Source: Octopus bimaculoides (taxonomy: Eukaryota). Taken from it: a DNA stretch of 64,000 bases. Where the stretch lies: NCBI RefSeq assembly GCF_001194135.2, contig NC_069000.1, positions 31,468,133 to 31,532,132 on the forward strand, in the 5' to 3' direction. This document shows, piece by piece, positions 1 to 51,860 of the stretch (positions are counted from its first letter, which is position 1; each line of letters opens with the position of its first letter). The translations under genes and the position numbers were made by a program. The notes beneath the pieces are model-generated. The model was not told the origin of the DNA. It saw nothing but the letters and a program-made list of their open reading frames with translations, and searched no databases.

Positions 1-156
1 AACATACAGAAAATTGCACTACTGGGTACTGCACACATTCTACGCAAAACACTTTCAATACAGTAAACATAAGAGCACCACAGCACATACCCAAGGCGCA
101 CAGAGCTGCGCTCGGTAGTGAAGTGAAAGCAAGTTATAAAAATAAAACTACTGAAC
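1..156 (+). mobile_element. 3' end of R4/Dong-type RLE non-LTR retrotransposon (ORF C-terminus, 3'UTR), subfamily D
   Basis: 1-66 translates NIQKIALLGTAHILRKTLSIQ*, the typical C-terminus of RLE LINE ORFs; ~90-bp UTR then (AAT)n tail from 157. Confidence 0.8.

Positions 157-225
<69 letters not shown>
157..225 (+). repeat. (AAT)n microsatellite: LINE tail and target site
   Basis: about 23 perfect AAT units between two LINE fragments. Confidence 0.95.
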
Positions 226-765
226 CCAGGGAGAAACGCTATCTCCACTCCTTTTCTGCTTGGCACTGACACTTTTATCTGATATGCTAAAAAGAACTGG
301 ATGTGGATACAAATGTTACGGCAAAACAATCAGCCACCTCTTACATATAGATGACCAAAAACTGTACGCTACAAATGATAAACAGCTGGAAACATTACTA
401 CAAACAGTACATGGATCTACCAAAGAAATAAACATGAAATTTGGCTTAGAAAAATCTGCCAAATCAACCTTGAAAAGAGGAAAACTAGTTAAGAGTGTCC
501 ACATTACACTACATAAAGCAAATGAAATAAAAGAATTAAACCAAAGCCAGACACACACATACTTAAGAATCAATGAACAAGATACGATACAATACGTACA
601 AATGAATGCGAAGAAAAGTTTACTAAAGATGAGTCAGATTAATACTGAAAACAGAGCACAATGCGAAAGACAAGTTAATAGATATCAACACACTAGCCCT
701 ACCATTTATAAGCTACAGCTATAATATTCTTAACTGGACTCTAAATGAACTCATCAAAATAGACA
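226..765 (+). mobile_element. 5'-truncated RLE LINE reverse transcriptase fragment (pseudogene)
   Basis: QGETLSPLLFCLAL...ISHLLHIDDQKLYA...MKFGLEKSAK (RT QGxxLSP and YxDD-like motifs); after a frameshift YSYNILNWTLNELIKID. Confidence 0.85.
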
Positions 766-1981
766 TTATTANNNNNNNNNNNNNNNNNNNNNNNNNNNNN
801 NNNNNNNNNNNNNNNNNNNNNNNNNNNNNNNNNNNNNNNNNNNNNNNNNNNNNNNNNNNNNNNNNNNNNNNTTATTATTATTATTATTATTAATATTATT
901 AATATTATTATTATTATTATTCATTGCACTGGCTATTGAAGTATTAGGGGGAAAATATACCGTTCGGATTGGAAAACTTTGATATAGGGGGTGGGGTGGG
1001 GGTTGATTTGTTATGGCTATTATTGCAATCAGGCTGTGATCGAGATATGCAAGATTCAAATCCCCTATAGTATGGTGATGACCGTTCTAATACTGTGATC
1101 GTGAATGAAATAAAGTATTAACCATATTCATATTTTATTGCACCTTCATGCAGAAATGTATACATACACACAATTACACAATCTTACTCACACACATACA
1201 GTCTTACACACACACACACACACAAAGTCTCGCACACTGGGACACACACACACACACGCACATACAGATATATATTACACAAACATACATACATGCACAC
1301 TCACACATATAAACATATATATACAGATACGAGTATAAAGAAATGCCCTTTAATGTAAACAATGCACGGATAGTAAATGGATTGTGTAGTATGAATTACA
1401 ATAATATGATAAAATCTATTTGGAAAATTTTAAATTTATCAAATTCTAAATTGAAACAATGAGTTTCACTGCTCCGATCGTCAGGAGAATATAAAATTAA
1501 ATCAAAATCGATAAAGACATTTATATACAAAATAGTCATATGAACAAAAAAAAAAAAAACTACCGTGTGCGGTGAAGCGCTGAACTAAATTAGTTTGGGG
1601 CATAATCACTGAACCGTTAGATATTTCTAAATAATTCAGCAAAAATTCAGATTCAAGTCCAGGTAAACAATAAGGCCTGGAGAGAGTATTTTGAAGGGTT
1701 TCCTTTGTAACAATAATTGTAGCTTCGTAGGGATGCGAGCAACACGCGTGCTCACACACACAGATACATACACACACTCACACATACACGTATTTACATG
1801 CCTGTGTGTGATGCGTATACGTACACACACACCCATATATACACACACACACATATATACATGTGTATACATATACAATGTACATATACTTTTATATATA
1901 TTATTTATATATGATATATACATATATATATATATATATATAGCTATATAAAATATATATATATGTGTGTATGCATGTATG

Positions 1982-2295
1982 TATGGCTGTGTTGTAAGGA
2001 GATTGCTTCCCAACCACATGGTTCCGGGTTCAGTCCCACAGTGTGCGTGGCACCTTGAGCAAGAGTGTCTTCTACTATAGCCTTGGGCCGACCAATACCT
2101 TGTGAGTGGATCTGCTAGACGGAAACTGAAAGAAGTCCGTCGTATATATTTACATGTATATATATTTTGTGTGTGTTTTTTGTCTGTGTCTGTCCCCCCA
2201 CCATCGCCTGACAAACGATGTTTGTGTGTTAATCTCCTCGAAACTTAGTGCTTCAGCAAAATAACCGATAGAATAATTACTACGCTTATAAAGAC
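1982..2295 (+). mobile_element. tRNA-derived SINE, family 1
   Basis: head ggctgtgttgtaag...ggttccgggttcagtccca (A/B-box-like), internal TA/TG tract, partial tail; homologous to 22165, 31490, 44070, 61365. Confidence 0.85.
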
Positions 2296-3366: not shown

Positions 3367-3421
3367 GTATATATATGTATGTATATACATATGTGTGTGT
3401 TTGTGTATTTATATGAATGTT

Positions 3422-3457
3422 TATATTAAGGGCTGTGTAGTGCGCATATTCAAAATG
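3422..3457 (+). repeat. 36-bp direct repeat copy 1 (possible TTAA-flanked DNA transposon end)
   Basis: tatattaagggctgtgtagtgcgcatattcaaaatg, identical to 7748-7783. Confidence 0.8.
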
Positions 3458-3710
3458 TCGTAGTTCATTAGTCACTCAATTGCGCACGCTGAGGCATGTA
3501 TAAAATTTGCTTCAAATATTTTCCGTTGCTCTGATGTTGTTTATTTTCTGTTTTCAAATCAGTATTTACATGGATAATGGTATTTAATATCACTTGTGCT
3601 TATATACCCATACCCGCATCCACACACCTAAACCCACTCGTATACACCTACGGACAGCCATATAAATGAATAGATCATGATCCATTTTATATTACCATAG
3701 TTAAAATATT

Positions 3711-3791
3711 CTCATTTTGTTTTCTTTTTTAGGTAAGTCTTTTGAAGAAAACTACACGCTATTCTGTTCTGCAAATATGCTTCCGGTAATG
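3711..3791 (+). promoter_or_regulatory. candidate recursive splice site / RS-exon
   Basis: CTCAT branch-like motif 3711-3715, T-rich tract 3715-3730, AG 3731-3732 followed directly by GTAAGT; second donor CCG|GTAATG at 3786. Confidence 0.5.
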
Positions 3792-5823
3792 TGAACATTT
3801 ATTTTACTGTTCCGGTCTCTTCATTAATCTTCAGAACATGTGATTTATATGTTTTCTTTTCTCTTTCCTCATCTTTAAAAACCATGTAATCCTCGCACCC
3901 CTTAACATACCATTATTCCTCAAATTCTATGCGTCCATGATGCTTTCCTGTTCTAATTGAATTCTTTTATTCAATATTTCCTCTATACTTACTGTTGATT
4001 TTGTTTGTTTATTTCTAGAAAATTACATGAATGAATTAGAATATCCATTCCTTATATAAGTAGTATTCTTGTGTATAAATTGAAATTAGGATGCATGCAG
4101 CCCAAATGTTTAATACGCCAAATAGACAGCGCAAATAACATAGATAATCGATAAAGAAATGCAACATTAACATATATATGTGTGTGCCTATATGTATGAA
4201 AGTGCATTTTGTTTCATATATTTCTATGATATGTAATACATATACACGCACGTACATGGAAGTATACACACACAAATGAGGGCGTACACATACACACACA
4301 TACAATATCATTAGGATTTTTTCAACAAGAAAATCGTATGAACAGTAGCATTGGCCATCATCTTTGATTGCAGACCTTTCATGACTAGTGTCCATATGTT
4401 CTGGAATATATACATACAGGCAGACATATGCATACATACATAAATTGACATATACGTACTTATATACATATATTCAATCACACATACATACATACGTGCT
4501 TAGATACATACATATGTATACGTTAATATAATAGTTAAACGCAGAAAACAGATTCATAATCCGCAATCTTTCCTAAAATCATAAAAAGTGTTTGTTTTTT
4601 TTTCTCCTACTACAATATTGTATACCACATACAATTAGAATACCTGTACAGGTACAAACACTTGCGTTTCTTGAATAGTCATTAGAGGAAATCTTTTCCA
4701 TGAATGTTATAATGCGTAATATTCTGGCTTCTACTGGATGTTTTAGGAGGAAAGACGATTGAAGAAGTTTCAGATTAATTCAAAAGCATTAGCATGTCAT
4801 ATGGTATTACTAAGAAAGAGACAGCATTCGCTAAACAGGAAAAATATTTATGTTAAGTGCTTAAAACGATAGAGAACGACACGCAGAAGGGAATCCAGCC
4901 GGGGTGGCACACTTATGCTTTATCTCACAGCATGAAACCTCTTCTTTCTTCGAACTATTTATACTATTTTTCTTGGCGGAGATCATTAACATTTTCCTTT
5001 GATTCTACTGTTTTACATAAATTTATTTCATTAGTCGTGGTTCGGCGGTCTGTCGAAGCTATACTTTCCTCACTTTTCCCGAAGTGAATGGACACATGCT
5101 CGAGGCATGCGACGTAAATATAGACAAATCATTATAACCAAGTAAGCGTCTACTACATAGCTACTTCACTGGCTTGCTTTAACTGCCAGCTAACTCTCTA
5201 ACCATAACTCAACATCTCAAAAATAAACCATCAAACAAGAAAGAGAGGAAATACATCTCTGATATTATTGCAACTGTTGTACCTGTAATTTCAATGAACT
5301 ACTTAAGCTCTCATTCAATTGTTTATGTTACTATTGAGAATGTCGAGAAATAATCATCGAAACACGATGCAGAAATATCAATAAACAATGGGCATCTGAC
5401 GCAGTATGAGCTCCGCCTACTATCCTCTGAGACCAAAACAATCGCAGCCACCACGCATGCTGGAAAGAAATGAAAAGAGGTAACGATTATCAATAGGAAT
5501 ACATCGTTTTGGATTGTGTATTTGACGTAGTAAGCAGCAAAATATCCAAGAATGGCCAATGACAGTTCTATGTATATATGCCACAAATAAACATAGATCA
5601 AATATTTACGTCGAACTACGTTGTTGCTATACTACCAACTTACAAGAGGTCACAAATTGGTAAATCGCTCTTTAGAACAATAAGAGCAATAAAAACAGCT
5701 AAGACAAAATGTAGGCGGTTGCTTAGTTAAGTGCAAAAAAATGTTGGTTTGATCAATGAAAACTTTCCACTTGTGCATCATTTTTAGAATGTTTATGTCT
5801 GCCTCTGGGCAATATGCCAGGGC

Positions 5824-7747: not shown

Positions 7748-7783
7748 TATATTAAGGGCTGTGTAGTGCGCATATTCAAAATG
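7748..7783 (+). repeat. 36-bp direct repeat copy 2
   Basis: identical to 3422-3457. Confidence 0.8.
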
Positions 7784-28551: not shown

Positions 28552-29135
28552 TATATATATATATATATATATNNNNNNNNNNNNNNNNNNNNNNNNNNNN
28601 NNNNNNNNNNNNNNNNNNNNNNNNNNNNNNNNNNNNNNNNNNNNNNNNNNNNNNNNNNNNNNNNNNNNNNNNNNNNNNNNNNNNNNNNNNNNNNNNNNNN
28701 NNNNNNNNNNNNNNNNNNNNNNNNNNNNNNNNNNNNNNNNNNNNNNNNNNNNNNNNNNNNNNNNNNNNNNNNNNNNNNNNNNNNNNNNNNNNNNNNNNNN
28801 NNNNNNNNNNNNNNNNNNNNNNNNNNNNNNNNNNNNNNNNNNNNNNNNNNNNNNNNNNNNNNNNNNNNNNNNNNNNNNNNNNNNNNNNNNNNNNNNNNNN
28901 NNNNNNNNNNNNNNNNNNNNNNNNNNNNNNNNNNNNNNNNNNNNNNNNNNNNNNNNNNNNNNNNNNNNNNNNNNNNNNNNNNNNNNNNNNNNNNNNNNNN
29001 NNNNNNNNNNNNNNNNNNNNNNNNNNNNNNNNNNNNNNNNNNNNNNNNNNNNNNNNNNNNNNNNNNNNNNNNNNNNNNNNNNNNNNNNNNNNNNNNNNNN
29101 NNNNNNNNNNNNNNNNNNNNNNNNNNTATATATAT

Positions 29136-29360
29136 ATATATACGTATGTGTTTGTGTGTCTGTGTTTGTCCCCACAACATCGCTTGACAACCGATGCTGG
29201 TGTGTTTAGGTCCCCGTAACTTAGCGGTTCGGCAAAAGAGACCCATAGAATAAGTACTAGGCTTCTAAAGAATAAGTCTTGGGGTCGATTTGCTTGACCA
29301 AAGGCGGTGCTCCAGCATGGCCACAGTCAAAAGACTGAAACAAGTAAAAGAGTAAAAGAT
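29136..29360 (+). mobile_element. SINE family 1, 3' half (head probably in the gap)
   Basis: catcgcttgacaaccgatg...cttagcggttcggcaaaagag...ggcggtgctccagcatggcc...gaaacaagtaaaagagtaaaag. Confidence 0.85.
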
Positions 29361-30559
29361 ATATATATATATATATATATATCAAATTATTATGTATCGA
29401 ACTATATTATCTGTGTATTTTTAAGTTCAAAATTGAAGTGTAGATTGAGTGAGATTTGGCTACTATTCTAGCATATCTACGCACCACGTATCAGAATCTA
29501 CTTGCTTTTATATGAGCGCATAATGTATTTGTTTTAGTGATTATGGTTATATGGTTATGTGTTGGTGTTGTTTCGTACTATTTGTACATCACTATAGTAG
29601 TACTTAATAACATATTATTAAGTTGTTTTCAATGTGTTAACGGTGTGTTATTACCATGTTCATAAGTTGTGGATTAAAATTTGTATGATAGAAAATATTT
29701 TTGATTATATGACTGAATAATTTAATGATACGTTTACAGTCTCTTAATAACGTGATTTGTAAAGAACGGTTTACTTAATTATTTGTTTCATGTTTCCAAT
29801 GGTAAGAATTGTCAGTGTTCTGTTGTTGGTATGTTGATCAAATGGTGAAGATAATTGCAGTGACATATGCTCTGGAATTACTATTTCATGTTTGATACAT
29901 TGAAGGCATTTAAGAAAGCTAACGCATCATGTATGCCTCGTAAATTCAGGCATATCAGTGTTAGGTATTGTACGAATTCATACTCAACCAGATTTCATTT
30001 TACTGTATTAACCTGAGTTAATCAGAGTGCAACAATGACAAGAATGATTCTGCATCGGCAACTGACAATCAGTTAATCAGTAAACAGTTCTTAATCCACC
30101 TGACATTTTGACTTTACACTGCACTCTGTCTCAGGTCAAGTTACATTCAAATCGAACTGTGTCTACACTGCATAAACATAAATAATAGAAAGAGTATGGG
30201 TACAAAACAAATATCTGGACCGCCCAGACTTGACAGAGTACGGGTAAACGAGAACTCCATCGCCACACATCACAATAATATGTTCGTGAAGTCACCGCTC
30301 GAAAATACAAGTGGTTGATAAAGCTTATAGGTGGCTAATTCATCAGTGTCTGGATAATGGACTTGCAGGAGTTACCGTGTAGTGTAAGCGGTATTCAGTT
30401 TGTAAATGTGGATGAGAATGTCTAAATACACAAGACAGTAATTTCTGTTGTAGAGAAGCCAAACAGAAGCCATTGAAGTGGGGTTGGCTCTATGAGCTTC
30501 AGTTGTGTGTGGAGAGTGAAAGGGGACATACACACACACGCACACACAGACACACACAC

Positions 30560-31489: not shown

Positions 31490-31868
31490 GTAGGCGTATG
31501 AGTGGGTGTGTGGTAAGTACCTTGCTTACCAGCCACATGGTTCCGGGTTCATTCCCACTGCGTGGCACCTTGGGCAAGTGACTTCTACTATAGCCTCGGG
31601 GCCGACCAAAGCCTTGTGAGTGGATTTGGTAGACAGAAACTGAAAGAAGCCTGTCGTATATATNNNNNNNNNNNNNNNNNNNNNNNNNNNNNNNNNNNNN
31701 NNNNNNNNNNNNNNNNNNNNNNNNNNNNNNNNNNNNNNNNNNNNNNNNNNNNNNNNNNNNNNNNNNNNNNNNNNNNNNNNNNNNNNNNNNNNNNNNNNNN
31801 NNNNNNNNNNNNNNNNNNNNNNNNNNNNNNNNNNNNNNNNNNNNNNNNNNNNNNNNNNNNNNNNNATA

Positions 31869-31902
<34 letters not shown>

Positions 31903-32145
31903 TGTGTGTGTGTTAGTGTGTGTGTGTGTGTGTTTGTGTGCCTGTGTTTGTCCCCCCAACATCGCTTGACAACCAATGCTGGTGTGTTTACGTCCCCGTA
32001 ACTTAGCGGTTTGGCAAAATAGTTCGATACAATAAGTACTAGGCTTACAAAGTATAAGACCTAGGGTCGATTTGCTCGACTAAAGGCGGTGCTCCAGCAT
32101 GGCCGCATTGAAATGACTGAAACAAATAAAAGAGAAAGAGAAAGA
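31490..32145 (+). mobile_element. SINE family 1, full length, with expanded internal microsatellite (gap)
   Basis: complete head 31490-31660, TA/gap/TG core, complete tail to gaaacaaataaaagag. Confidence 0.9.
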
Positions 32146-35100: not shown

Positions 35101-36669
35101 AGTGAATATACAGAAATTGATAGCCAAACCATTATGTTCACATACACACAGACACACACACACACACACACACATACATATACATCCATCCATACATATA
35201 TGTGTGTATGTGTGTGTTCGTGTGTGTAGTGTGTGTATGTACTAACTATGTATCACATAGAAATTCTGACTAAAATTGTAGATCTGAACATTTTACTGAT
35301 AATGGAATAGTTTTGAATGCATATGATTCAATATGTGTGTAGCTTATAAAATGCTAATACACACATATAAATATATGTATAAGCAACAAAGAATACATAC
35401 AGCAACTTTATGCATTGTTAATTTCTATATGGCTGATGTGTATTATTGCCACAGGATGCATATGCATGCATAATAAACATAATTGCATCAACCGATCGCT
35501 GCTAATTTGAAACGGTTGTAAAGATCTATTTCAGACTATGTTAATTCTTCGTCAAATATATCTATGTTTAAGTTTATATACCATCTTTTATAATTCATAT
35601 GTCATATATACATACTTGTCAAATATTACACTTACGAGCTATACACATTTTATGATCAACTGCAGGTTCAGCAGAATACTTTTTACCATGTGTATAACGT
35701 GTGAGTCTAAGAATGTGGATCAGTACGATCCTTATTAAATACACGTACACACGCGTGCGCACAAATATGCACGCAGACATATATACATTCACACGCATAC
35801 ACAAAGACATAGAAACACACACACGTCATACAGACGTCACTAACACTGCGAATAACCCACCTTTATTATATATATGGATGTGTGTGCGCGTGTGTGCGTA
35901 TGCATGCATTCGTATATGCATGTGTATATATTTATGAATGTATGTATTACGTATCAGCCATTGAACAGCTTATTTGGCCGCAGTCTAATTCGTTTACTGC
36001 TGCAATAGTATACTTTTACATCTCTCTCGTATTGAGGTAAGCATACCAAAATGGCTACCCATCCACAGATGCAAAATATTTTCAACGTCATAACATTAAC
36101 GATGCAGGAAATAACATTTGTGAACTTCTTTGGTTTTAAATACTTCTGTATATCTGTCTAACTGTTAATCCACATTTGGTGTATGCATGTGTGTATGTAT
36201 TATGTGTTCACGTATGTATGCATGCATGTTCTAGGCATAACATTAAATTGTTTCCGGTGGCGAATCTCCATTTTGGGAATTCTGGACTTGTGGGAAGCAA
36301 GGAGTCACTTCCTAATTATCATTAGTTACAGATCTTTTCTGATTCATAAAGGCCGAATGTGAGACGGCTCTCATCTGACAAGATATGGCAATCCATATGT
36401 TCTCTTCTCTTTTTAATTATTTTGATTCTTCTGAGAAAGGAGCTGATTTCTAACAAAAATACAAAGCTCCATCTTTTGGACATACATTACTGAAAAAAGG
36501 TCATATTTTAAACTTGAAAAACGTATTGCCTGTTTTTAGTACTCCACTTACAAATATTATTTGTAATATGTAATTTCGTTGATTACGTTTTCTGAAAATT
36601 ATGGAGTGAATTTTAGGGCTTATAAATCTAATATTCTCCTATCCTTCTTTAATACCGGTTCCTATATGC

Positions 36670-39334: not shown

Positions 39335-39775
39335 CAAGCGTGACTGTGTGGTAATATACTCGTTTCCCAACCACATGGTTCCGAGTTCAGTCCCACCAGC
39401 AACTGTCTTCCACTATAGTAACGAGTAAACCAAGGCTTTGTGAATGAATTTGGAAGACAAAATTTAAAGACGTCCGTTGTATATATATATGTGTGTGTGT
39501 GTGTGAGTGTGTGTGTGTGAGTGTGTGTGCATGTATGTATCCAGGTGTGTGTGTTATTGTGTCCGCTTTTATACCCCTATCATCGCTTGGCAACCGGTAT
39601 TGGTGTGTTTACATTCCAGTGACTTCACCATTCAGCGACAGGGAAACTATAGAATAAATACTAGGCTTAAAACAAATAAGCCCTGGGGTCCATTTATTCT
39701 ATCACAGCCCTTCAAGCCGGTGCTCCAGCATGGCTGCAGTCAAATGATTGAAACAAGTGAATGAATAAATAAAAA
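39335..39775 (+). mobile_element. SINE family 1, degenerate full length
   Basis: head ...cccaaccacatggttccgagttcagtccc, TG core, tail ...tgctccagcatggctgcagtcaaatgattgaaacaag. Confidence 0.8.
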
Positions 39776-41780
39776 ATACATACATGTATATATATATANN
39801 NNNNNNNNNNNNNNNNNNNNNNNNNNNNNNNNNNNNNNNNNNNNNNNNNNNNNNNNNNNNNNNNNNNNNNNNNNNNNNNNNNNNNNNNNNNNNNNNNNNN
39901 NNNNNNNNNNNNNNNNNNNNNNNNNNNNNNNNNNNNNNNNNNNNNNNNNNNNNNNNNNNNNNNNNNNNNNNNNNNNNNNNNNNNNNNNNNNNNNNNNNNN
40001 NNNNNNNNNNNNNNNNNNNNNNNNNNNNNNNNNNNNNNNNNNNNNNNNNNNNNNNNNNNNNNNNNNNNNNNNNNNNNNNNNNNNNNNNNNNNNNNNNNNN
40101 NNNNNNNNNNNNNNNNNNNNNNNNNNNNNNNNNNNNNNNNNNNNNNNNNNNNNNNNNNNNNNNNNNNNNNNNNNNNNNNNNNNNNNNNNNNNNNNNNNNN
40201 NNNNNNNNNNNNNNNNNNNNNNNNNNNNNNNNNNNNNNNNNNNNNNNNNNNNNNNNNNNNNNNNNNNNNNNNNNNNNNNNNNNNNNNNNNNNNNNNNNNN
40301 NNNNNNNNNNNNNNNNNNNNNNNNNNNNNNNNNNNNNNNNNNNNNNNNNNNNNNNNNNNNNNNNNNNNNNNNNNNNNNNNNNNNNNNNNNNNNNNNNNNN
40401 NNNNNNNNNNNNNNNNNNNNNNNNNNNNNNNNNNNNNNNNNNNNNNNNNNNNNNNNNNNNNNNNNNNNNNNNNNNNNNNNNNNNNNNNNNNNNNNNNNNN
40501 NNNNNNNNNNNNNNNNNNNNNNNNNNNNNNNNNNNNNNNNNNNNNNNNNNNNNNNNNNNNNNNNNNNNNNNNNNNNNNNNNNNNNNNNNNNNNNNNNNNN
40601 NNNNNNNNNNNNNNNNNNNNNNNNNNNNNNNNNNNNNNNNNNNNNNNNNNNNNNNNNNNNNNNNNNNNNNNNNNNNNNNNNNNNNNNNNNNNNNNNNNNN
40701 NNNNNNNNNNNNNNNNNNNNNNNNNNNNNNNNNATATATATATGTACATACATACATATATACATATATTGTGTAGGTAGATACTGATATCCGTTCGTTT
40801 GGTCTACATTATGAGGTTTCAATAAAACATGAATAGAGACAAACAATATGAATCACTGAAAAGGTAGTAATATATATACATATGAGTGCGTGTGAGTATG
40901 AAAGTGTGTGTGTGTGCCTACACACACACACATACACATATATATATATATCTAGATATAGAACAATAGATAGATAGATAGATAGATAGATAGACAGATA
41001 AATAGATGCATATTAGGAAATGTATGCTTACAGACACGAACACACATGCAAGTGAGCAGGTGCATGCACGCGCGCGCACACGCACAAACATACACACAAA
41101 CACACACACATAAAAACACAAACGCACACGTACAAACATACACTTATAAGTGTATGTGTGTAGGCGGGGTACTTGTTCAGGTTAGTCTTCAACATTTGCG
41201 AATCCTTCTTTTGAAAAATATCAAATCGTTCTGTATGTATGTATGTAGGTATGTATGTATGTATTTATGTATGCATGTATGTATGTATGCATGTATATAT
41301 GCATGTATGTATGTATTGTATGTATGTTAGCATGAATCTATGACCGCTTCTGTTCGTACTTGTTTGATGTCTCCTTTGAAGAAAGAGTTGGGTTCTAAAA
41401 AAACAACACTCTATTGTTGAATAGCAGACGAAAAATTTCAACTTTTGACCTTGAGAAATGTCTTGTATAATTTTCATCTTCCGCTTATTAATTCTATTTG
41501 GAATGTATGTTTATGTGGTTGGTTTCTTTTTCTGCAAGCGTTATCATTACCAGAATGTCTCCAAGACATGTACTTACAAAGCGAAATGTTTTATTTATTA
41601 TTAATATAAATGTGAATTATAATCTGTCTATAAAAGCAGAATGTTTCGAAGCTGTTATTTGTAATTGCCATCTTTCTTTTTTTTATTTTCGGAGAGAATT
41701 TTTCACATCATCAGGTCAGCTGACATCTATGTATATACATGTGTGCGTATATATGTATAAGTAAATAAATAGATAAATAA

Positions 41781-41944: not shown

Positions 41945-42750
41945 GTGCTGTACCAGTGGAAAGGAATGTATTCGGCCCTTAGCGAATATGAGCTGTCCTC
42001 AGCAAAGGAGGAGCTCGTTAAGGCGGTAAATAGAAGGGACGAGCATTTGGAAAGAGTAAAGAGTTTTGCTGAGGCTGCAGAGCTGAAGAAAAGGGAAATG
42101 GACCTAGCCGGACTGAAGGAGCTGTGTGAGATGACACAGAAGGTGGGCGGTGACGTAAAGTTATTATCCCCGAAAAGGGTTATGGTAAATATGGAAAAGA
42201 AGACCATTACCTACAAGGTGTACGCAGTGGGGAGTAGGAAGGTGGATCGAATGGAGATGGGAAAAGCAGAAAAAGCACTGAAGGGGCTTTCGAAGGAAGT
42301 GACTTACATAGCGAAAGGAAATGGTTGTCCAGTTTAGGACAGCAGAAGAGGCAAAAAGGCTGGTGAGTGCAATAGTAAAAACGGAGGAAGTGGTACTTCT
42401 ACCCACGTACTTTGGAAGAAACACTTCTAATGTAGGGGTAGAAGGAATCCTACCCGATATAGAATTGGCTTGGGTTGCTGCAGCAGCCGTCCTCGTTGGT
42501 AGTGAGCAGGAGGTGGATGTCCTCCAAGCCACAGAGACGGGGGAAGGAGGATATAGAGAAAAAATATTGGAAATCATCATACAAGCGGAGGCGAAGCAGG
42601 TGCAAAAATGTGTCGGAGACGGTGACGTTGGGAAAAATAGTATTCAGAGTATGCGTTGAGGGCAGAGTTCCACGATGCTTTAAATGTGGCCAAAGAGGCC
42701 ACATTAGAGCTCAAGTCCAGAGAGTACCGAAAAGAGAAAGGAGTAGATAG
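41945..42750 (+). pseudogene. retroelement gag/ORF1-like remnant (RRM-like segment plus CCHC zinc knuckle), frameshifted
   Basis: three overlapping open frames 41945-42337, 42321-42659, 42475-42750; VVQFRTAEEAKRL (RRM-like); CFKCGQRGHIRAQ, where restoring one T at ~42715 gives CX2CX4HX4C. Confidence 0.75.
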
Positions 42751-43182: not shown

Positions 43183-44069
43183 TGTGTGTGTGTTAGTAAA
43201 TTCTTTGAAAATTTCCCGAGAGAATTTGTGTTATTCCAAAAATCAACGTTTCACCACTGGAAATTTGGCAGCAATAATATAATTTATATTCTTTATGTTC
43301 CTGCTTGTAGACTTAATTTGCCGAAACTTGTTAACTTACCACATTTTAGTCTGCCTGAAGATTCCAATTTTCCAGAACGAATTATGTACATAGTAATGTT
43401 TTCATGTTTGCCTATAAATTCAGCTACGTCTGAAAATTTACAATTTGGTTTGTGTAGCTGTAAAATGCAACGAAAATTACCCATAAATGTTGGAAATGAT
43501 CATGTCAACTGCGTAGCTGACATGAGATATATTTTAGCCCCAAACAGACTTTGTGCTATTTCCCTAATTAAGGCTTAACTTAACCAAATTTAGGTAGACC
43601 TTTAATGAAAGATATTCAAGCTGTGACCATTCTGCCAGTTTCAAGCATTTGACAACAGAAATCAACATGTTACTATTTAAGGCAATGGTGAGCCATTTAG
43701 GAGTTCGAACAGAAAATTTCTGGTTAGATGATTGTGTTTTCATATGGCGCACTTTTTTGACTGAAGTGTTTCACCAAAATTGCTTGAATTGAGAAGCAAA
43801 ATTGTTTTTAAAAAGAGTCGTATGAGTACTAAATTCCTGATATTTTCTCTTCACTGTCTTATATAAAATATCTTCCTAGTGCATAATCAATATTTTCAGT
43901 ATTTCAGTATTCCGGGGATTTCCCAGTTTCGGGTATTTCGTAGCTTTTTCTTGCGTTTGTTTTGCAAAACATTATATTGGAAATGTGACGATTTCACGAT
44001 TATAAAGTCTGAAAGAAGTTACGCTATTAATTGATACAGGTTCAGTTCCCACACGTGATACTAGTTTTC

Positions 44070-44440
44070 TTTTATTCTTTCACTTGTTCCAGTCATTAGG
44101 CCACAGCCATGCTGGGGCACCGCGTTGAAGAATTTTTAGTCGAATGAATCGATCCTAGTGCTCATTTTGTTTTTTAAACAAGGGACTTATACCTTCAAAT
44201 CTTTTATCGAAGCAATAAGAGACGGGGTCATAAACACATCAACATCGGTTGTCAAGCTGTGGTGGAAGACAAATACAGACACAAAGCCACACACACACAC
44301 GCACACATATACGGGTTTCTTTCAGTTTCTGTCTACCAAATGAAATGACAAGGCTTTGGTCGGTCTGAAGCTGTAGTGGAATGTGCCATGCAGTGGGGCT
44401 GAACTCGGAGCTACATGGCTGGAAAGCAAACTTGTTACCA
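44070..44440 (-). mobile_element. SINE family 1, full length, degenerate
   Basis: tail cacttgttccagtcatt...ccatgctggggcaccgc; head ...gcagtggggctgaactcggagctacatggctggaaagc. Confidence 0.8.
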
Positions 44441-44973
44441 AACACTCCTTGCCAAGATGTTCTTGTGTCTTAGAAATCATATTTAGGAAGTGAGATTTTT
44501 TCAAGAATTATCGTTCATTTAAAAGGGAGATATTTTTTCACCGTTGCTTTTCAAGTCTTAGTTTATACATTTATTTTTGCTAGTGTGATTTATCTGAGTT
44601 GACAGTGATATTACAGGACAAATGATGGGCGTTTGGACAAATCGTAACCGTTTTGGCTAGTTATTCAGATGGAGGCCCTGTCAATGCCACTACTTCTATG
44701 GAAATTTCCACTTATGTCAAAATTCCGTGGACTTTAAAATAATTCGTGCGCATTTCCAAAATATGATATTGTGAAGATTCCATTTGTTGTTGCCGGCAAT
44801 GTTGCTAGAAATGCCTGTTAGATATAGTTTTGTTATAATAGGAAATCTAATACAATATCTTTCTAAATTCCCGTGTAAAACTGTTTCATCATACTATTTA
44901 TATTCATAACGGTCTTGTGCGATAGGTTATGAAAGCCTAGCTATTTGTAGCATTTCTCATTTGGAACAGGAGA

Positions 44974-45675: not shown

Positions 45676-46233
45676 CAGTGTGTTTCTCAACCTATTTTCT
45701 CTCAGGCCCTACAATATCTTTTCATAAAAAAAGTATACCCCCACATGTGGTTTGGAAAAAGCATTTTATTTTTAATAAAGAATCTATCAATAACTCTCTT
45801 ATTAAGTACTCAGTACAAAAAAGAGTGTATATTATTGATTAAGTAAAAATGTGCATCAGTTTAATGAGAACGTTGTGCCTGGCTACTATGGCAGATTTTC
45901 TTGATTCGAGGACACCATTTTGCTAGCTTCAGCTCTAAATGAACACATTTTGTAATTTCAAGTTTGCTCCTCGTGGCTAGAAGCAAATCGTCAACAGCAC
46001 TAAAGCCACACTCAACCAAATGAGACGAGGGAAAATGAATCAAAAGTTCCTTTGTGAAGTTGCAGTGTTAAGGCATTTGCTTTCAACTTCATCACAAAGG
46101 CACATTTTCTTGCTGCCCTTCATTTTGAACAGAGTATTCACTGATTCTATTGTAATGAATCATGGAGCCCATTCCCCATAACAACGTTTCTAGGCCCCAG
46201 CAGTGGGGCGTATGCTCCATGTTGGGAATCTCT
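45676..46233 (-). mobile_element. hAT (Buster/Charlie-like) DNA transposon remnant
   Basis: 45861-46043 translates HFPSSHLVECGFSAVDDLLLATRSKL...HSSQAQRSH*, the hAT dimerisation C-terminus; end motifs cagtgtgtttctcaac and gttgggaatctct. Confidence 0.75.
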
Positions 46234-47699: not shown

Positions 47700-48900
47700 T
47701 TTGGCAAACATTCAATCAGGAATACATTGGATAGCAATAATTTTGTTTCGTTTTCCTCCTCATCTCCATCTCCTTGTCTATGCCTGCTTTTGGCAGAGAC
47801 ATGATACATTGTAAAAAGCTTTCGTATCTTGACGATAACTTTGTTGATATCAGAGTGAGGTCAGTTAATAATATTGAAGCTATGTGATAATAGGTATGGA
47901 CAATGTCTTTATGATCTCAGTTTTGTTTCTGGTATTCAACTCGGTAACGGTCCTTCCTTATCTTTTCTCTCGTTATTGACTATTTAATCAAGTTTCCCTT
48001 AGCTGGGTGTCTCTATCTAGCGTGACAGTACATGTGTTTGATAGTTTTTCCCGCGGTCAATGTAGCCTTGGCTCATTTGTGTCAAGCGTAAATTCCAATT
48101 TGATGTCACTAAATTGTTTGACTGTGTGTAGGAGCGTTTTTAGTTGTCAGTCATATTTTTTCGAACAGTTTCAAGGTATCTATGTAGAGGAGATGTTTGT
48201 CGTTCTATACACTCTGTATCCATAATTTGTTTCCCTCAAAGTTCACTTCTAAGAAACAGTGCTAAACAAAATAACAAAGGAGATAATGAACCTCCTTGGA
48301 AGATTCCATAATTCGTATCCAGATGTAGTGTAAGTATTGAAAATTAATATCGTTTTCCAGATGCACAATACCTGATTATTAATGAGATTTTGAACATCTT
48401 CGAACATTCCTTTGTCCAGTTGTGAGGAAGACCTTCAAAGGCCTTCTTGTAGACTATCCAGGTTACTGAGAAATACGTTTTTCTGTTACAGTTTTCAAAA
48501 CCATTCTGTTAATCGACAATTGATGTCTGCATCCATAAGACCCAAGTTTACATCTGTTTTGTTCATCTGGGAAGATGAACAGCTGATGTGCAGCCTACGA
48601 TACTATGGCTTTTATGCTCTTCAACAATCTAATATTTTCCAGATGATTCTGGCCATTCCAACGTGGTGCACTTTTTTGGGGCATTCTATTTCCATTTCCT
48701 TTATATTCTTCCCAGTAAATTTCGATACTGTACTCAAGGTCCCAACAATAATCGGCATTATCTTCACGTTTTCTATCTTCTACAGTCCGGTTATCTTGTA
48801 TTTAAAAACATTCTTTATGTCTATTTTTTTTCGCATTCCTTCGTAACTACTCGTGGTCAAATGAGCATGCAACATCAAGTAGAGAGCACGTGTAATTTAA
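47700..48900 (-). mobile_element. R4/Dong-type RLE LINE reverse transcriptase remnant
   Basis: FPDEQNRCKLGSYGCRHQL, TWIVYKKAFEGLPHNW, GIFQGGSLSPLLFCLAL, SFNIIN..KIRKLFTM; many frameshifts; homologous to 226-765. Confidence 0.85.
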
Positions 48901-49227: not shown

Positions 49228-49535
49228 AGACGTCGCACAGTATCCCGTATCGTGATGTTGTGGATTGAAAATATTGTGTCTACCGGGAGTTTGTACTGTT
49301 TGTCAAGTCACAACACAGACATCATACAGACAGTACTTTACGCAATATTCATGCAGTTCGAAGTATAGCCAATTTTTACAATACACCTGTTTCTTCAGAT
49401 TGGGTGGTATTGAAACCAATGCTCCGATGACAATAGGGACATCCGTTATGTTTGACTCTGGCAGCTGCCACATATCGGCGATCTCAATTTTTCAAGTCTC
49501 CGTACCGTAATTATCACTCTTTTCTCTTGCTCTTG
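49228..49535 (-). mobile_element. 3' end of RLE LINE, subfamily E
   Basis: KEQEK..YGDLKIEIADMWQL...VPIVIGALVSIP...KLAILRTA*ILRKVLSV* (stop 49322-49324), UTR, then (ATG)n tail. Confidence 0.8.
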
Positions 49536-49640: not shown

Positions 49641-50159
49641 ATACCCTGATGCAGTACCAGGCAGTGGCTTCATGGATTCTGATCTTAACTGATTGGAAGT
49701 GTTATCATGTACATTGTTTCGTTTTGGTATAAAAGATGGGCTACAGCAGATATTCTGCTCAATACCGTAGATTTGCTTGTCAGTTGTTTGATCTTAACCA
49801 GTTGAGTATGTCCCTTAGTGGTTGACAATATGTGCATCTTTAATCATGAGCAGAAGTATTTGGGGAGCCTCTGGGGTTTGGATAATTCACCTTTGGTAAC
49901 ATGGGTGTTTTGTATAACAGCCTTATTCAGGGACCTTTTGATCGCGATGGGCTACTGAACTTGAAGAATATTCTAACTGGGGCCCACCTGTAAGTTTGTG
50001 CGCTGTTAATCTTGATATGAGATCACTATGTCGCGTACATATGGTTGTGATGCATGTGTCTGGTGTACCCTTATCAGACGGGTAGTCATGATGGGTATAC
50101 TGGGCTTCTTATATTTTACCCCAGTGTCACTTTGATGGAATGCACTGCTCTCACACTCA
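49641..50159 (+). mobile_element. ORF-less (TAA)n-associated retroposon (element A), copy 2
   Basis: homologous to 24816-25330; preceded and followed by (AAT)n. Confidence 0.8.
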
Positions 50160-50189
50160 ATAATAATAATAATAGTAATAATAATAATA

Positions 50190-50457
50190 ATGCCCAAAAT
50201 GGCTGAAGTTCAAAAGATAGTGCTCATGGGAACTGCCCATATCCTACGTAAAATACTGTCTATGTGATCTCAAATTTTAAAGCAAACATAATTTTCTTAT
50301 GGTTTCTTAAACATTCACTTGAACAAAACTGTACAAATCCAAATATATGGTACCCTAGGCATAACACCTACATGAACTTCTAACTTGTTGTCTCTTGAGG
50401 TCTCTGGGTGAGACTTGGATCCAACTTGTACAAATGCAAAACAAAAGTCAAACATAA
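50190..50457 (+). mobile_element. 3' end of RLE LINE, subfamily B
   Basis: MPKMAEVQKIVLMGTAHILRKILSM* (stop 50265-50267), ~190-bp UTR, (AAT)n tail 50458-50550. Confidence 0.85.
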
Positions 50458-50551: not shown

Positions 50552-50860
50552 TCCAAGAAAGAAGGTGAAAAAATAGATTAAGACAACCTTCTTAAGTAGG
50601 AAATAGTCCGACTATGGAAAATAAAGAAGGTGAAGATAGTGTCAAGTATTGTTGGGTTCTTGGGGACAGTATCAGAAGGCATCAAGAGGAATATAAAGGA
50701 AATTGGAATTCAGTGCTCAGTAGAACTGTTACAAAAGGTTTGCCTCCTTGGCATGGCCAGAATAATCAGGAAAGTATTAGATAGCTGAAAAGAATGGATA
50801 GCATGGTAGCGTAGGCTGCAGGCAGCAATCTCGCTTCGCATGCAAGACTCCAGGAGTTTT
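50551..50860 (+). mobile_element. 3' end of RLE LINE, subfamily C
   Basis: KKEGEKID..EIVRLWKIKKVKIV..IVGFLGTV...LLQKVCLLGMARIIRKVLDS* (stop 50786-50788). Confidence 0.85.
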
Positions 50861-51556: not shown

Positions 51557-51860
51557 GGCTCAGTGATTAGAGCGTTGGGCTCAAAATCATGAAGTAGTGA
51601 GTTCGATTCTCGGATCGGGCTGTGTTTTGATCTTGAGCAAGACGCTTTATCTTGCGTTGCTACAATTCACTAATATGTAGAAATTAGTCGCGACATCACA
51701 CGTGCCAAACTGTACAGCCCTTTGCCTTTTCTTTGGGTAACATTGGTAACGTTGAGAGGAGCGGCTGCTAGGCTTAGGCGGCCTTGCCCGGACTTGAGCC
51801 GAAGAGGGTAACTTTGTAGTTGCAATCCCATGGTCATTCATGACCGAAGAGGGTCTTTCA
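51557..51860 (+). mobile_element. tRNA-derived SINE family 3
   Basis: ggctcagtgattagagcg (A box) ... gagttcgattctc (B box); homologous to 58149-58472. Confidence 0.85.

What the first reader, a model, noticed from the sequence alone, without database searches (positions are those of the whole stretch)
3711..3791. Branch point-polypyrimidine-AG|GTAAGT: candidate recursive splice site with RS-exon
Seen: ttCTCATtttgttttcttttttAG|GTAAGT. A yUnAy branch motif has its A at 3714, there is no other AG for 30 nt upstream, and a perfect donor follows the acceptor directly. A second donor (CCG|GTAATG at 3786) would define a 53-nt exon, open in two frames (one reads KSFEENYTLFCSANMLP). Known: this architecture is the ratchet-point/RS-exon signature of very long introns in Drosophila and vertebrates. 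Inference: the window may lie in a giant plus-strand intron that is removed stepwise, or contain a cassette exon starting with GTAAGT. I am not aware of this being characterised in cephalopods.
Basis: partly seen in the sequence, partly recalled or inferred. Interest (0 to 1): 0.7.

Follow-up and report, generated by a model that had tools for sequence, protein, structure and literature searches.

The report
Lone recursive-splice-site look-alike, unverified
The sequence really does contain a textbook-looking "splice acceptor joined to splice donor" motif, but a genome of this size should hold about a hundred by chance. Nothing available here shows that the region is transcribed, sits inside a gene or is conserved, so it remains an untested candidate.

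Summary
CTCAT lies at 3711-3715 (A at 3714), a 16-nt T-rich tract at 3715-3730, AG|GTAAGT at 3731-3738, and no AG occurs in 3701-3730. A second donor, CCG|GTAATG (GT at 3786), delimits 53 nt.

The core is rarer than chance for one window. I expect 0.003-0.013 per 64 kb (both strands), and the tool's shuffles give 0.01. That still means roughly 45-220 per Gb, so about 10^2 or more in a multi-Gb genome.

The extras are ordinary:
- A yUnAy motif occurs upstream of 37-56% of AGs.
- An equal-or-better downstream donor follows 16-21% of AG|GT sites.
- At least 2 open frames occur in 40% of random 53-mers.

At sequence level the site matches every published trait of Drosophila ratchet points: TT at -5/-6, a ~50-nt out-of-frame cryptic exon, and a stronger first donor.

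The defining functional features could not be tested: a host intron on the + strand, junction, saw-tooth or lariat reads, and conservation. The window is a gap-ridden, microsatellite- and transposon-rich draft with no detectable host exon on either strand and no strand asymmetry. No orthologous or transcript sequence was reachable.

Best estimates: fortuitous, unused motif ~0.6; genuine recursive site ~0.2; conventional or cassette exon use ~0.12.

The parts
3701..3730 (+). 30-nt AG-free zone upstream of the acceptor
   Evidence: The nearest upstream AG is at 3699-3700. A zone this long occurs at 17% of all AGs in the window.
3711..3715 (+). CTCAT, a candidate branch-point motif (yUnAy) with A at 3714 (-19)
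   Evidence: Read directly. The motif class is found upstream of 37% of all AGs and 56% of strong acceptor-like AGs. The position lies just outside the -36..-21 range reported for fly ratchet points.
3715..3730 (+). Polypyrimidine tract TTTTGTTTTCTTTTTT (15/16 Y), with T at -5 and -6
   Evidence: There are 18/20 pyrimidines upstream of the AG, and only 15 AGs in the window (both strands) reach this. TT at -5/-6 is present in 99.5% of fly ratchet points.
3731..3732 (+). AG, candidate 3' splice site (acceptor)
3733..3738 (+). GTAAGT, a consensus 5' splice site directly after the acceptor
   Evidence: As TAG|GTAAGT it scores 10.3 bits on an approximate consensus matrix recalled from memory. Only 7 plus-strand GT sites in the window score as high.
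3733..3785 (+). 53-nt candidate cryptic recursive-splicing (RS) exon
   Evidence: Its length is not a multiple of 3. Frames 0 and 2 are open, which is ordinary since 40% of random 53-mers have >=2 open frames. Stops follow at 3787-3789 (TAA, frame 0) and 3792-3794 (TGA, frame 2).
3786..3791 (+). GTAATG, a weaker second donor (CCG|GTAATG)
   Evidence: It scores 6.2 bits against 10.3 for the first donor. Donors this good occur about once per 500 nt per strand. 16-21% of AG|GT sites have one 20-100 nt downstream.

Best explanation
Most likely this is a fortuitous juxtaposition. A T-rich tract ending in AG happens to be followed by GTAAGT, inside a locally pyrimidine-rich, non-coding, repeat-flanked stretch of a large AT-rich genome. 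The spliceosome does not use it, or uses it only as splicing noise. No step of any function is shown. What is shown is that the letters are there and that about 10^2 equally good sites are expected by chance in a genome of a few Gb.
For: The core motif is expected 0.0026-0.013 times per 64 kb, which is about 45-220 per Gb on both strands.

The local 700-bp block 3458-4160 is pyrimidine-rich on the + strand, with AT skew -0.14 and GC skew -0.21. This raises the local odds of an acceptor-like tract.

All accessory features are common by chance.

There is no sign of a host gene:
- No Pfam-detectable exon appears among 254 ORFs of >=50 aa on either strand.
- Only decayed transposon ORFs were found.
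- There are no Rfam or tRNA hits.
- The window shows no overall strand skew.

The window is dense in microsatellites (132 TRF rows) and in SINE-like copies. In a squid genome, simple-repeat content correlates negatively with gene density, and long gene deserts exist (PMC9068888).

In large vertebrate genomes, motif-defined sites are rarely used. In human, 36,870 conserved AGGT sites with strong acceptors yielded 342 with junction reads and 16 with saw-tooth. Mouse brain has 19-20 sites, in fewer than 0.06% of long introns.
Against: Within this single window the core motif is unlikely (p about 0.003-0.013). It is the only one of 9 AG|GTRAG sites with a real pyrimidine tract.

The ensemble reproduces the published fly architecture in every sequence-level respect: TT at -5/-6, a ~50-nt out-of-frame downstream exon, and a first donor stronger than the second.

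The site is not inside any repeat family recognisable in the window. A 64-kb stretch without exons is also what a giant intron looks like.

If the species had several hundred ratchet points, as flies do, the posterior for function would exceed one half.
Confidence: 0.6

Rival explanations
1. It is a genuine intronic recursive splice site (ratchet point) in a very long plus-strand intron. The 53-nt segment 3733-3785 would be recognised by exon definition through the weak donor at 3786. The upstream exon would be spliced to 3733, which regenerates exon|GTAAGT. This stronger donor would then be used, so the 53 nt and the rest of the intron are removed and nothing remains in the mRNA. Every step here is inferred from fly and vertebrate work. 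None is shown here.
For: The site has a juxtaposed strong acceptor and perfect donor, and TT at -5/-6 as in 99.5% of fly ratchet points.

The cryptic exon is 53 nt, against '~50 nt, out of frame' for fly RS-exons. The first donor is stronger than the second (10.3 vs 6.2 bits), as reported for flies and mammals.

The core is rarer than chance in one window. The site lies in non-repeat DNA. No exon was detected within 64 kb, which is compatible with a giant intron.
Against: There is no evidence of transcription, strand or host gene. Conservation is untestable.

The candidate branch A at -19 lies outside the -36..-21 range of fly ratchet points.

About 10^2 chance sites are expected per genome. 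Usage of motif-defined sites in large genomes is very low.

The microsatellite-rich, exon-free context also fits a gene desert.

No report of recursive splicing in any mollusc exists in the searchable literature.
Confidence: 0.2
2. It is a conventionally used splice signal. One option is a 53-nt alternative, poison or untranslated cassette exon (3733-3785) that merely begins with GTAAGT. The other is a donor for an exon ending at 3732.
For: Both an acceptor and a downstream donor are present. Two frames are open across the 53 nt. Expressed exons that begin with a donor-like sequence are common in mammals (>6,400 cited).
Against: The 53-nt length would shift the reading frame, and stops follow immediately in both open frames.

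The second donor is weak, lacking G at +5.

An exon ending at 3732 would end in a 16-nt T-rich tract with no convincing upstream ORF.

No protein-family signal was found anywhere nearby.
Confidence: 0.12
3. The T-rich tract is the complement of the A-rich 3' tail of a decayed minus-strand retroposon whose body covers about 3733-4030. On this view the acceptor-like tract is a transposon by-product, and GTAAGT is simply the last bases of that element.
For: On the minus strand the sequence reads ...ACTTACCT-AAAAAAGAAAACAAAA. The window is full of LINE and SINE remains in both orientations.
Against: No other copy of 3458-4160 exists in the window. No target-site duplication or repeat boundary was found. 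No repeat library was available to test this.
Confidence: 0.06

Closest known systems
Drosophila intronic ratchet points with cryptic RS-exons (Ubx, kuz, Bx and others; Duff et al. preprint 10.1101/006163; Joseph & Lai PMC8605326)
   Same: Both have AG|GTAAGT with a long T-rich tract and TT at -5/-6. Both have a short (~50 nt) out-of-frame downstream segment ending in a weaker donor. Both sit in non-coding DNA far from any detectable exon.
   Different: Fly sites are defined by junction, saw-tooth and lariat reads and by strong conservation, none of which is available here. The fly branch-point range is -36..-21, against -19 here. The host intron and strand are unknown here.
Vertebrate recursive splice sites in long neuronal genes (nine saw-tooth sites of Sibley et al. 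as summarised in PMC6110456; 19-20 sites in mouse brain, PMC8797253)
   Same: Both show the AGGTAAGT core complementary to U1, a pyrimidine-rich 20 nt upstream, and an RS-exon with a downstream donor. Both occur in a large, repeat-rich genome.
   Different: Vertebrate sites lie in first or second introns longer than 50 kb of genes longer than ~300 kb and are highly conserved. Here neither the gene nor conservation is known.
Expressed RS-exons such as the 51-nt Ubx microexons mI/mII
   Same: Both are short exons (53 vs 51 nt) that start with a donor consensus.
   Different: The Ubx microexons preserve the reading frame (51 nt) and are ultraconserved coding sequence. This 53-nt segment would shift the frame and shows no coding signal.
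Non-functional intronic or intergenic AGGT decoys (for example the 36,870 'putative' human sites, of which <1% had junction reads; PMC6110456)
   Same: It is a sequence-only match with no supporting RNA evidence, and sites of this kind are expected by the hundred per genome.
   Different: This instance is at the strong end of the motif distribution, with a perfect GTAAGT and 18/20 pyrimidines.

Membership tests
Intronic recursive splice site (ratchet point) | [quoted passage not shown] | tested here: met
   TTTTTTAG|GTAAGT at 3725-3738. It is the only AG|GTRAG site of 9 in the window with a strong pyrimidine tract.
Intronic recursive splice site (ratchet point) | Prominent polypyrimidine tract with TT at -5/-6 (99.5% of fly sites) | tested here: met
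   There are 18/20 pyrimidines, and T at 3727 and 3728.
Intronic recursive splice site (ratchet point) | Branch point upstream (fly ratchet points -36..-21; human 20-50 nt) | tested here: inconclusive
   CTCAT has its A at -19, just outside both reported ranges. The motif class is present at 56% of acceptor-like AGs by chance.
Intronic recursive splice site (ratchet point) | Downstream cryptic RS-exon (~50 nt, usually out of frame) ending in a donor weaker than the regenerated one | tested here: met
   The segment is 53 nt, with CCG|GTAATG at 6.2 bits against 10.3 bits. The same arrangement is also seen at 16-21% of random AG|GT sites.
Intronic recursive splice site (ratchet point) | Lies in a long intron (>11 kb in flies, >50 kb in mouse) of a gene transcribed from the same strand | not testable with these tools
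   No annotation was available. No host exon was found on either strand. There is no strand skew. The source genome is absent from the protein and contig collections.
Intronic recursive splice site (ratchet point) | Exon-to-site junction reads, saw-tooth coverage and lariats from and to the site | not testable with these tools
   No RNA-seq data were accessible.
Intronic recursive splice site (ratchet point) | Strong evolutionary conservation of the acceptor|donor motif relative to its flanks | not testable with these tools
   No orthologous sequence could be retrieved. The exact 26-mer is absent from metagenome contigs, and the protein-based look-ups were empty.
Expressed RS-exon or cassette exon beginning with a donor consensus | Frame-preserving length or a recognisable, conserved coding sequence | tested here: not met
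   53 nt is not a multiple of 3. Stops follow at 3787 and 3792 in the two open frames. No family signal was found. A non-coding or poison exon is not excluded.
Expressed RS-exon or cassette exon beginning with a donor consensus | Presence of the exon in mature mRNA | not testable with these tools
   No transcript data were available.

The most novel reading that the evidence does not exclude
Position 3732|3733 is a working ratchet point with a 53-nt cryptic RS-exon in a giant plus-strand intron of a mollusc. This would be the first recursive splice site outside insects and vertebrates, and it would show that stepwise intron removal operates in lophotrochozoans with Drosophila-like site architecture.
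Probability: 0.2. Interest if true: 0.55.

Novelty: not a real feature. Interest (0 to 1): 0.25.

Why it matters
If the site were used, recursive splicing would extend to a third major animal lineage, one with very large, neuron-rich gene sets and long introns. It would also give a concrete site for mutagenesis. As it stands it is one sequence match of a kind expected by the hundred per genome. Its main value is as an entry in a genome-wide candidate list to be crossed with total RNA-seq and multi-species alignments.

Tried and rejected
1. Looking for the source genome or orthologues. Exact look-ups of three window ORFs found nothing on record. A homology search with the reverse-transcriptase fragment returned only 2 proteins, the best from a 568-nt ENA metagenome contig with 79% nt identity. 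An exact 26-mer scan of metagenome contigs gave 0 hits. I ran no further search on the low-complexity ORF beside the site, because one search showed the database holds almost nothing from this lineage.

2. Looking for host exons. I concatenated 254 ORFs of >=50 aa and scanned them against Pfam, with 0 families. The control shows that weak transposon hits of 20-21 bits are lost in that format, so only exons worth roughly 25 bits or more would have been seen.

3. Strand of transcription from AT/GC skew after masking microsatellites. There is no signal. Transposon orientation is mixed.

4. Repeat membership of 3458-4160. No other copy exists in the window, and there are no terminal repeats, only low-complexity matches.

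5. Rfam and tRNA scans found nothing.

6. Literature on recursive splicing in cephalopods or molluscs. None was found.

7. An exon ending at 3732 was rejected as unlikely, because the exon would end in a T-rich tract and has no upstream ORF.

Full report
**The observation**

Reading 3400-4100 confirms every letter and coordinate:
- CTCAT lies at 3711-3715, with A at 3714.
- TTTTGTTTTCTTTTTT lies at 3715-3730.
- AG is at 3731-3732 and GTAAGT at 3733-3738.
- The nearest upstream AG is at 3699-3700, so 30 nt are AG-free.
- CCG|GTAATG has its GT at 3786-3787, which delimits 53 nt (3733-3785).
- Frames 0 and 2 of those 53 nt are open, and frame 2 reads KSFEENYTLFCSANMLP.
- Both open frames meet a stop just beyond the segment: TAA at 3787 and TGA at 3792.

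**Is it more than chance?**

AGGTAAGT alone is not enriched: 2 copies against 2.06 expected. With eight pyrimidines in front it occurs once against 0.01 expected per window in dinucleotide shuffles.

Shuffles destroy real T-tracts, so I also counted the window's own acceptor-like AGs. With a 20-nt AG-free zone there are 15 with >=18/20 pyrimidines and 74 with >=16/20, on both strands. I multiplied these by P(GTAAGT|AG) = 1.7e-4 from a second-order model. That gives 0.0026 to 0.013 expected per 64 kb, or about 45-220 per Gb.

The core is therefore unusual for one window but expected about 10^2 or more times in a multi-gigabase genome. Of the nine AG|GTRAG sites in the window only this one has a strong tract. 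The runner-up is GAG|GTAAGC at 36036 (+) with 15/20.

The accessory details add little:
- A yUnAy motif at -15..-40 precedes 37% of all AGs and 56% of strong acceptor-like AGs.
- A 30-nt AG-free zone occurs at 17% of AGs.
- Donors at least as good as CCG|GTAATG (6.2 bits on an approximate consensus matrix recalled from memory) occur about once per 500 nt per strand.
- Such donors follow 16-21% of all AG|GT sites at 20-100 nt.
- 40% of random 53-mers have two or more open frames.

**Surroundings**

The window is a draft assembly with 15 N-gaps totalling 6,263 N. It has 132 tandem-repeat rows and GC of about 0.37.

The only protein-like ORFs are decayed transposon pieces (coordinates):
- a reverse-transcriptase fragment at 155-721 (+), RVT_1 with E = 2e-6;
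- a frameshifted gag-like region with a zinc knuckle at 41945-42750 (+);
- a Tc1/mariner-like DDE_3 pseudogene at 54419-55391 (-);
- several LINE 3' tails.

A SINE-like family has at least ten diverged copies. Neither that family nor anything else in the window matches 3458-4160. The site therefore lies in DNA that is unique within the window, between (TA/TG)n microsatellites.

That 700-bp block is pyrimidine-rich on the + strand, with AT skew -0.14 and GC skew -0.21. This locally favours acceptor-like tracts. The window as a whole shows no strand asymmetry (-0.017 and -0.020).

**Host gene**

A Pfam scan of 254 ORFs of >=50 aa found no family. Sensitivity was limited to roughly 25 bits or more, as the control shows. 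There were no Rfam or tRNA hits.

Both a giant intron and a gene desert fit these results. In a squid genome, gene density falls with simple-repeat content and long deserts exist (PMC9068888). That leans slightly towards gene-poor DNA.

**Related sequences**

The source genome and its relatives are essentially absent from the collections I could reach:
- Three exact ORF look-ups failed.
- The reverse-transcriptase fragment found only two proteins. The better one is on a 568-nt ENA metagenome contig with 79% nucleotide identity.
- The exact 26-mer around the site is absent from JGI metagenomes.

Conservation, transcription and the claimed cephalopod origin therefore could not be tested.

**Comparison with what is known**

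Fly ratchet points are juxtaposed acceptor|donor motifs with an extended pyrimidine tract and TT at -5/-6 in 196 of 197 cases. Their branch points lie at -36..-21. They sit in introns of 11-133 kb and are strongly conserved.

These sites depend on a cryptic RS-exon of about 50 nt that is poorly conserved, usually out of frame, and ends in a donor weaker than the regenerated one. Flies have more than 500 such sites, against nine clear ones in mammals.

The candidate matches all the sequence-level traits: TT at -5/-6, 53 nt out of frame, and donors of 10.3 against 6.2 bits. The exception is the branch A at -19.

Sequence alone predicts use poorly in large genomes. In human, 36,870 conserved AGGT sites with strong acceptors in long introns gave 342 with junction reads and 16 with saw-tooth. 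In mouse brain, 19-20 sites were found, in fewer than 0.06% of long introns.

No paper in the searchable library reports recursive splicing in cephalopods or other molluscs.

**Weighing**

Conditional on seeing the motif, the odds depend on how many true sites the species has. With the downstream donor included, the chance rate is about 0.0005-0.002 per window. A genome of about 2.7 Gb would need roughly 80-340 true ratchet points for the odds to reach even. That calculation is my own inference and assumes about a quarter of true sites are as strong as this one.

A vertebrate-like number (tens) gives about 10-20%, and a fly-like number (hundreds) gives more than 50%. The genome is large, repeat-bloated and locally exon-free and microsatellite-rich. 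On that basis my estimates are:
- about 0.6 for an unused chance motif;
- about 0.2 for a true recursive site;
- about 0.12 for conventional use as a cassette, poison or non-coding exon;
- about 0.06 for a retroposon-tail by-product.

**Verdict**

It is a single untested candidate with no supporting evidence beyond the motif. If real, it would be a new member of a known kind in a new phylum.

Noticed in passing
window 3422-3457 and 7748-7783: A perfect 36-nt direct repeat (ATTAAGGGCTGTGTAGTGCGCATATTCAAAATG...) lies 4.3 kb apart, and the flanks are unrelated. It may be a fragment of a dispersed element.
   Followed up: partly
window 36015-36046 (+): A second, weaker acceptor|donor juxtaposition, TCTCTCTCGTATTGAG|GTAAGC, lies on the same strand with 15/20 pyrimidines and a 26-nt AG-free zone. 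It is 32 kb downstream of the candidate. By itself it is compatible with chance.
   Followed up: partly
window 1922-2293, 22149-22673, 27021-27169, 29127-29382, 31496-32143, 39345-39797, 44062-44445, 53424-54004, 61359-61673: A SINE-like dispersed repeat of about 150-300 nt has at least ten copies in both orientations at 67-88% identity, often next to N-gaps and microsatellites. ARAGORN finds no tRNA-like head.
   Followed up: partly
window 155-721 (+): A reverse-transcriptase fragment (RVT_1, E = 2e-6) follows an (AAT)n run. Its closest database relative is a 568-nt ENA metagenome contig (ERZ23872314) at 79% nt and 74% aa identity.
   Followed up: yes
window 41945-42750 (+): A gag-like coding region is split over three overlapping frames and ends in a CCHC zinc knuckle (PF00098, E = 3e-4). 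It looks like a frameshifted retroelement remnant.
   Followed up: partly
window 54419-55391 (-): A Tc1/mariner-type transposase pseudogene (DDE_3, E = 7.5e-4) is broken into at least three frames.
   Followed up: partly
window 23939-24743 (-), 48598-48801 (-), 49306-49491 (-), 50596-50785 (+): Several copies of the C-terminal part of one LINE-like ORF family are present (motifs ...IVIGALG......LLGMARIIRKVL...). The pair 24782-25287 and 49712-50191 is inverted at 78% identity.
   Followed up: no
window 45864-46067 (-): This ORF resembles, from memory only, the C-terminal tail of hAT-type transposases (…VECGFSAV…LELKLA…). It has no Pfam hit.
   Followed up: partly
window 13449-13536: A degenerate 20-nt tandem array contains TTAGGG-like units (GTTAGGGTTACGGTTTTAGG). 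It may be an interstitial telomere-like repeat.
   Followed up: no
window 51557-51854 and 58150-58470: An inverted pair of a second ~300-nt repeat family has 73% identity.
   Followed up: no
whole window: There are fifteen N-gaps of 16-935 nt. Many directly abut microsatellites, which suggests that assembly breaks are caused by simple repeats.
   Followed up: no
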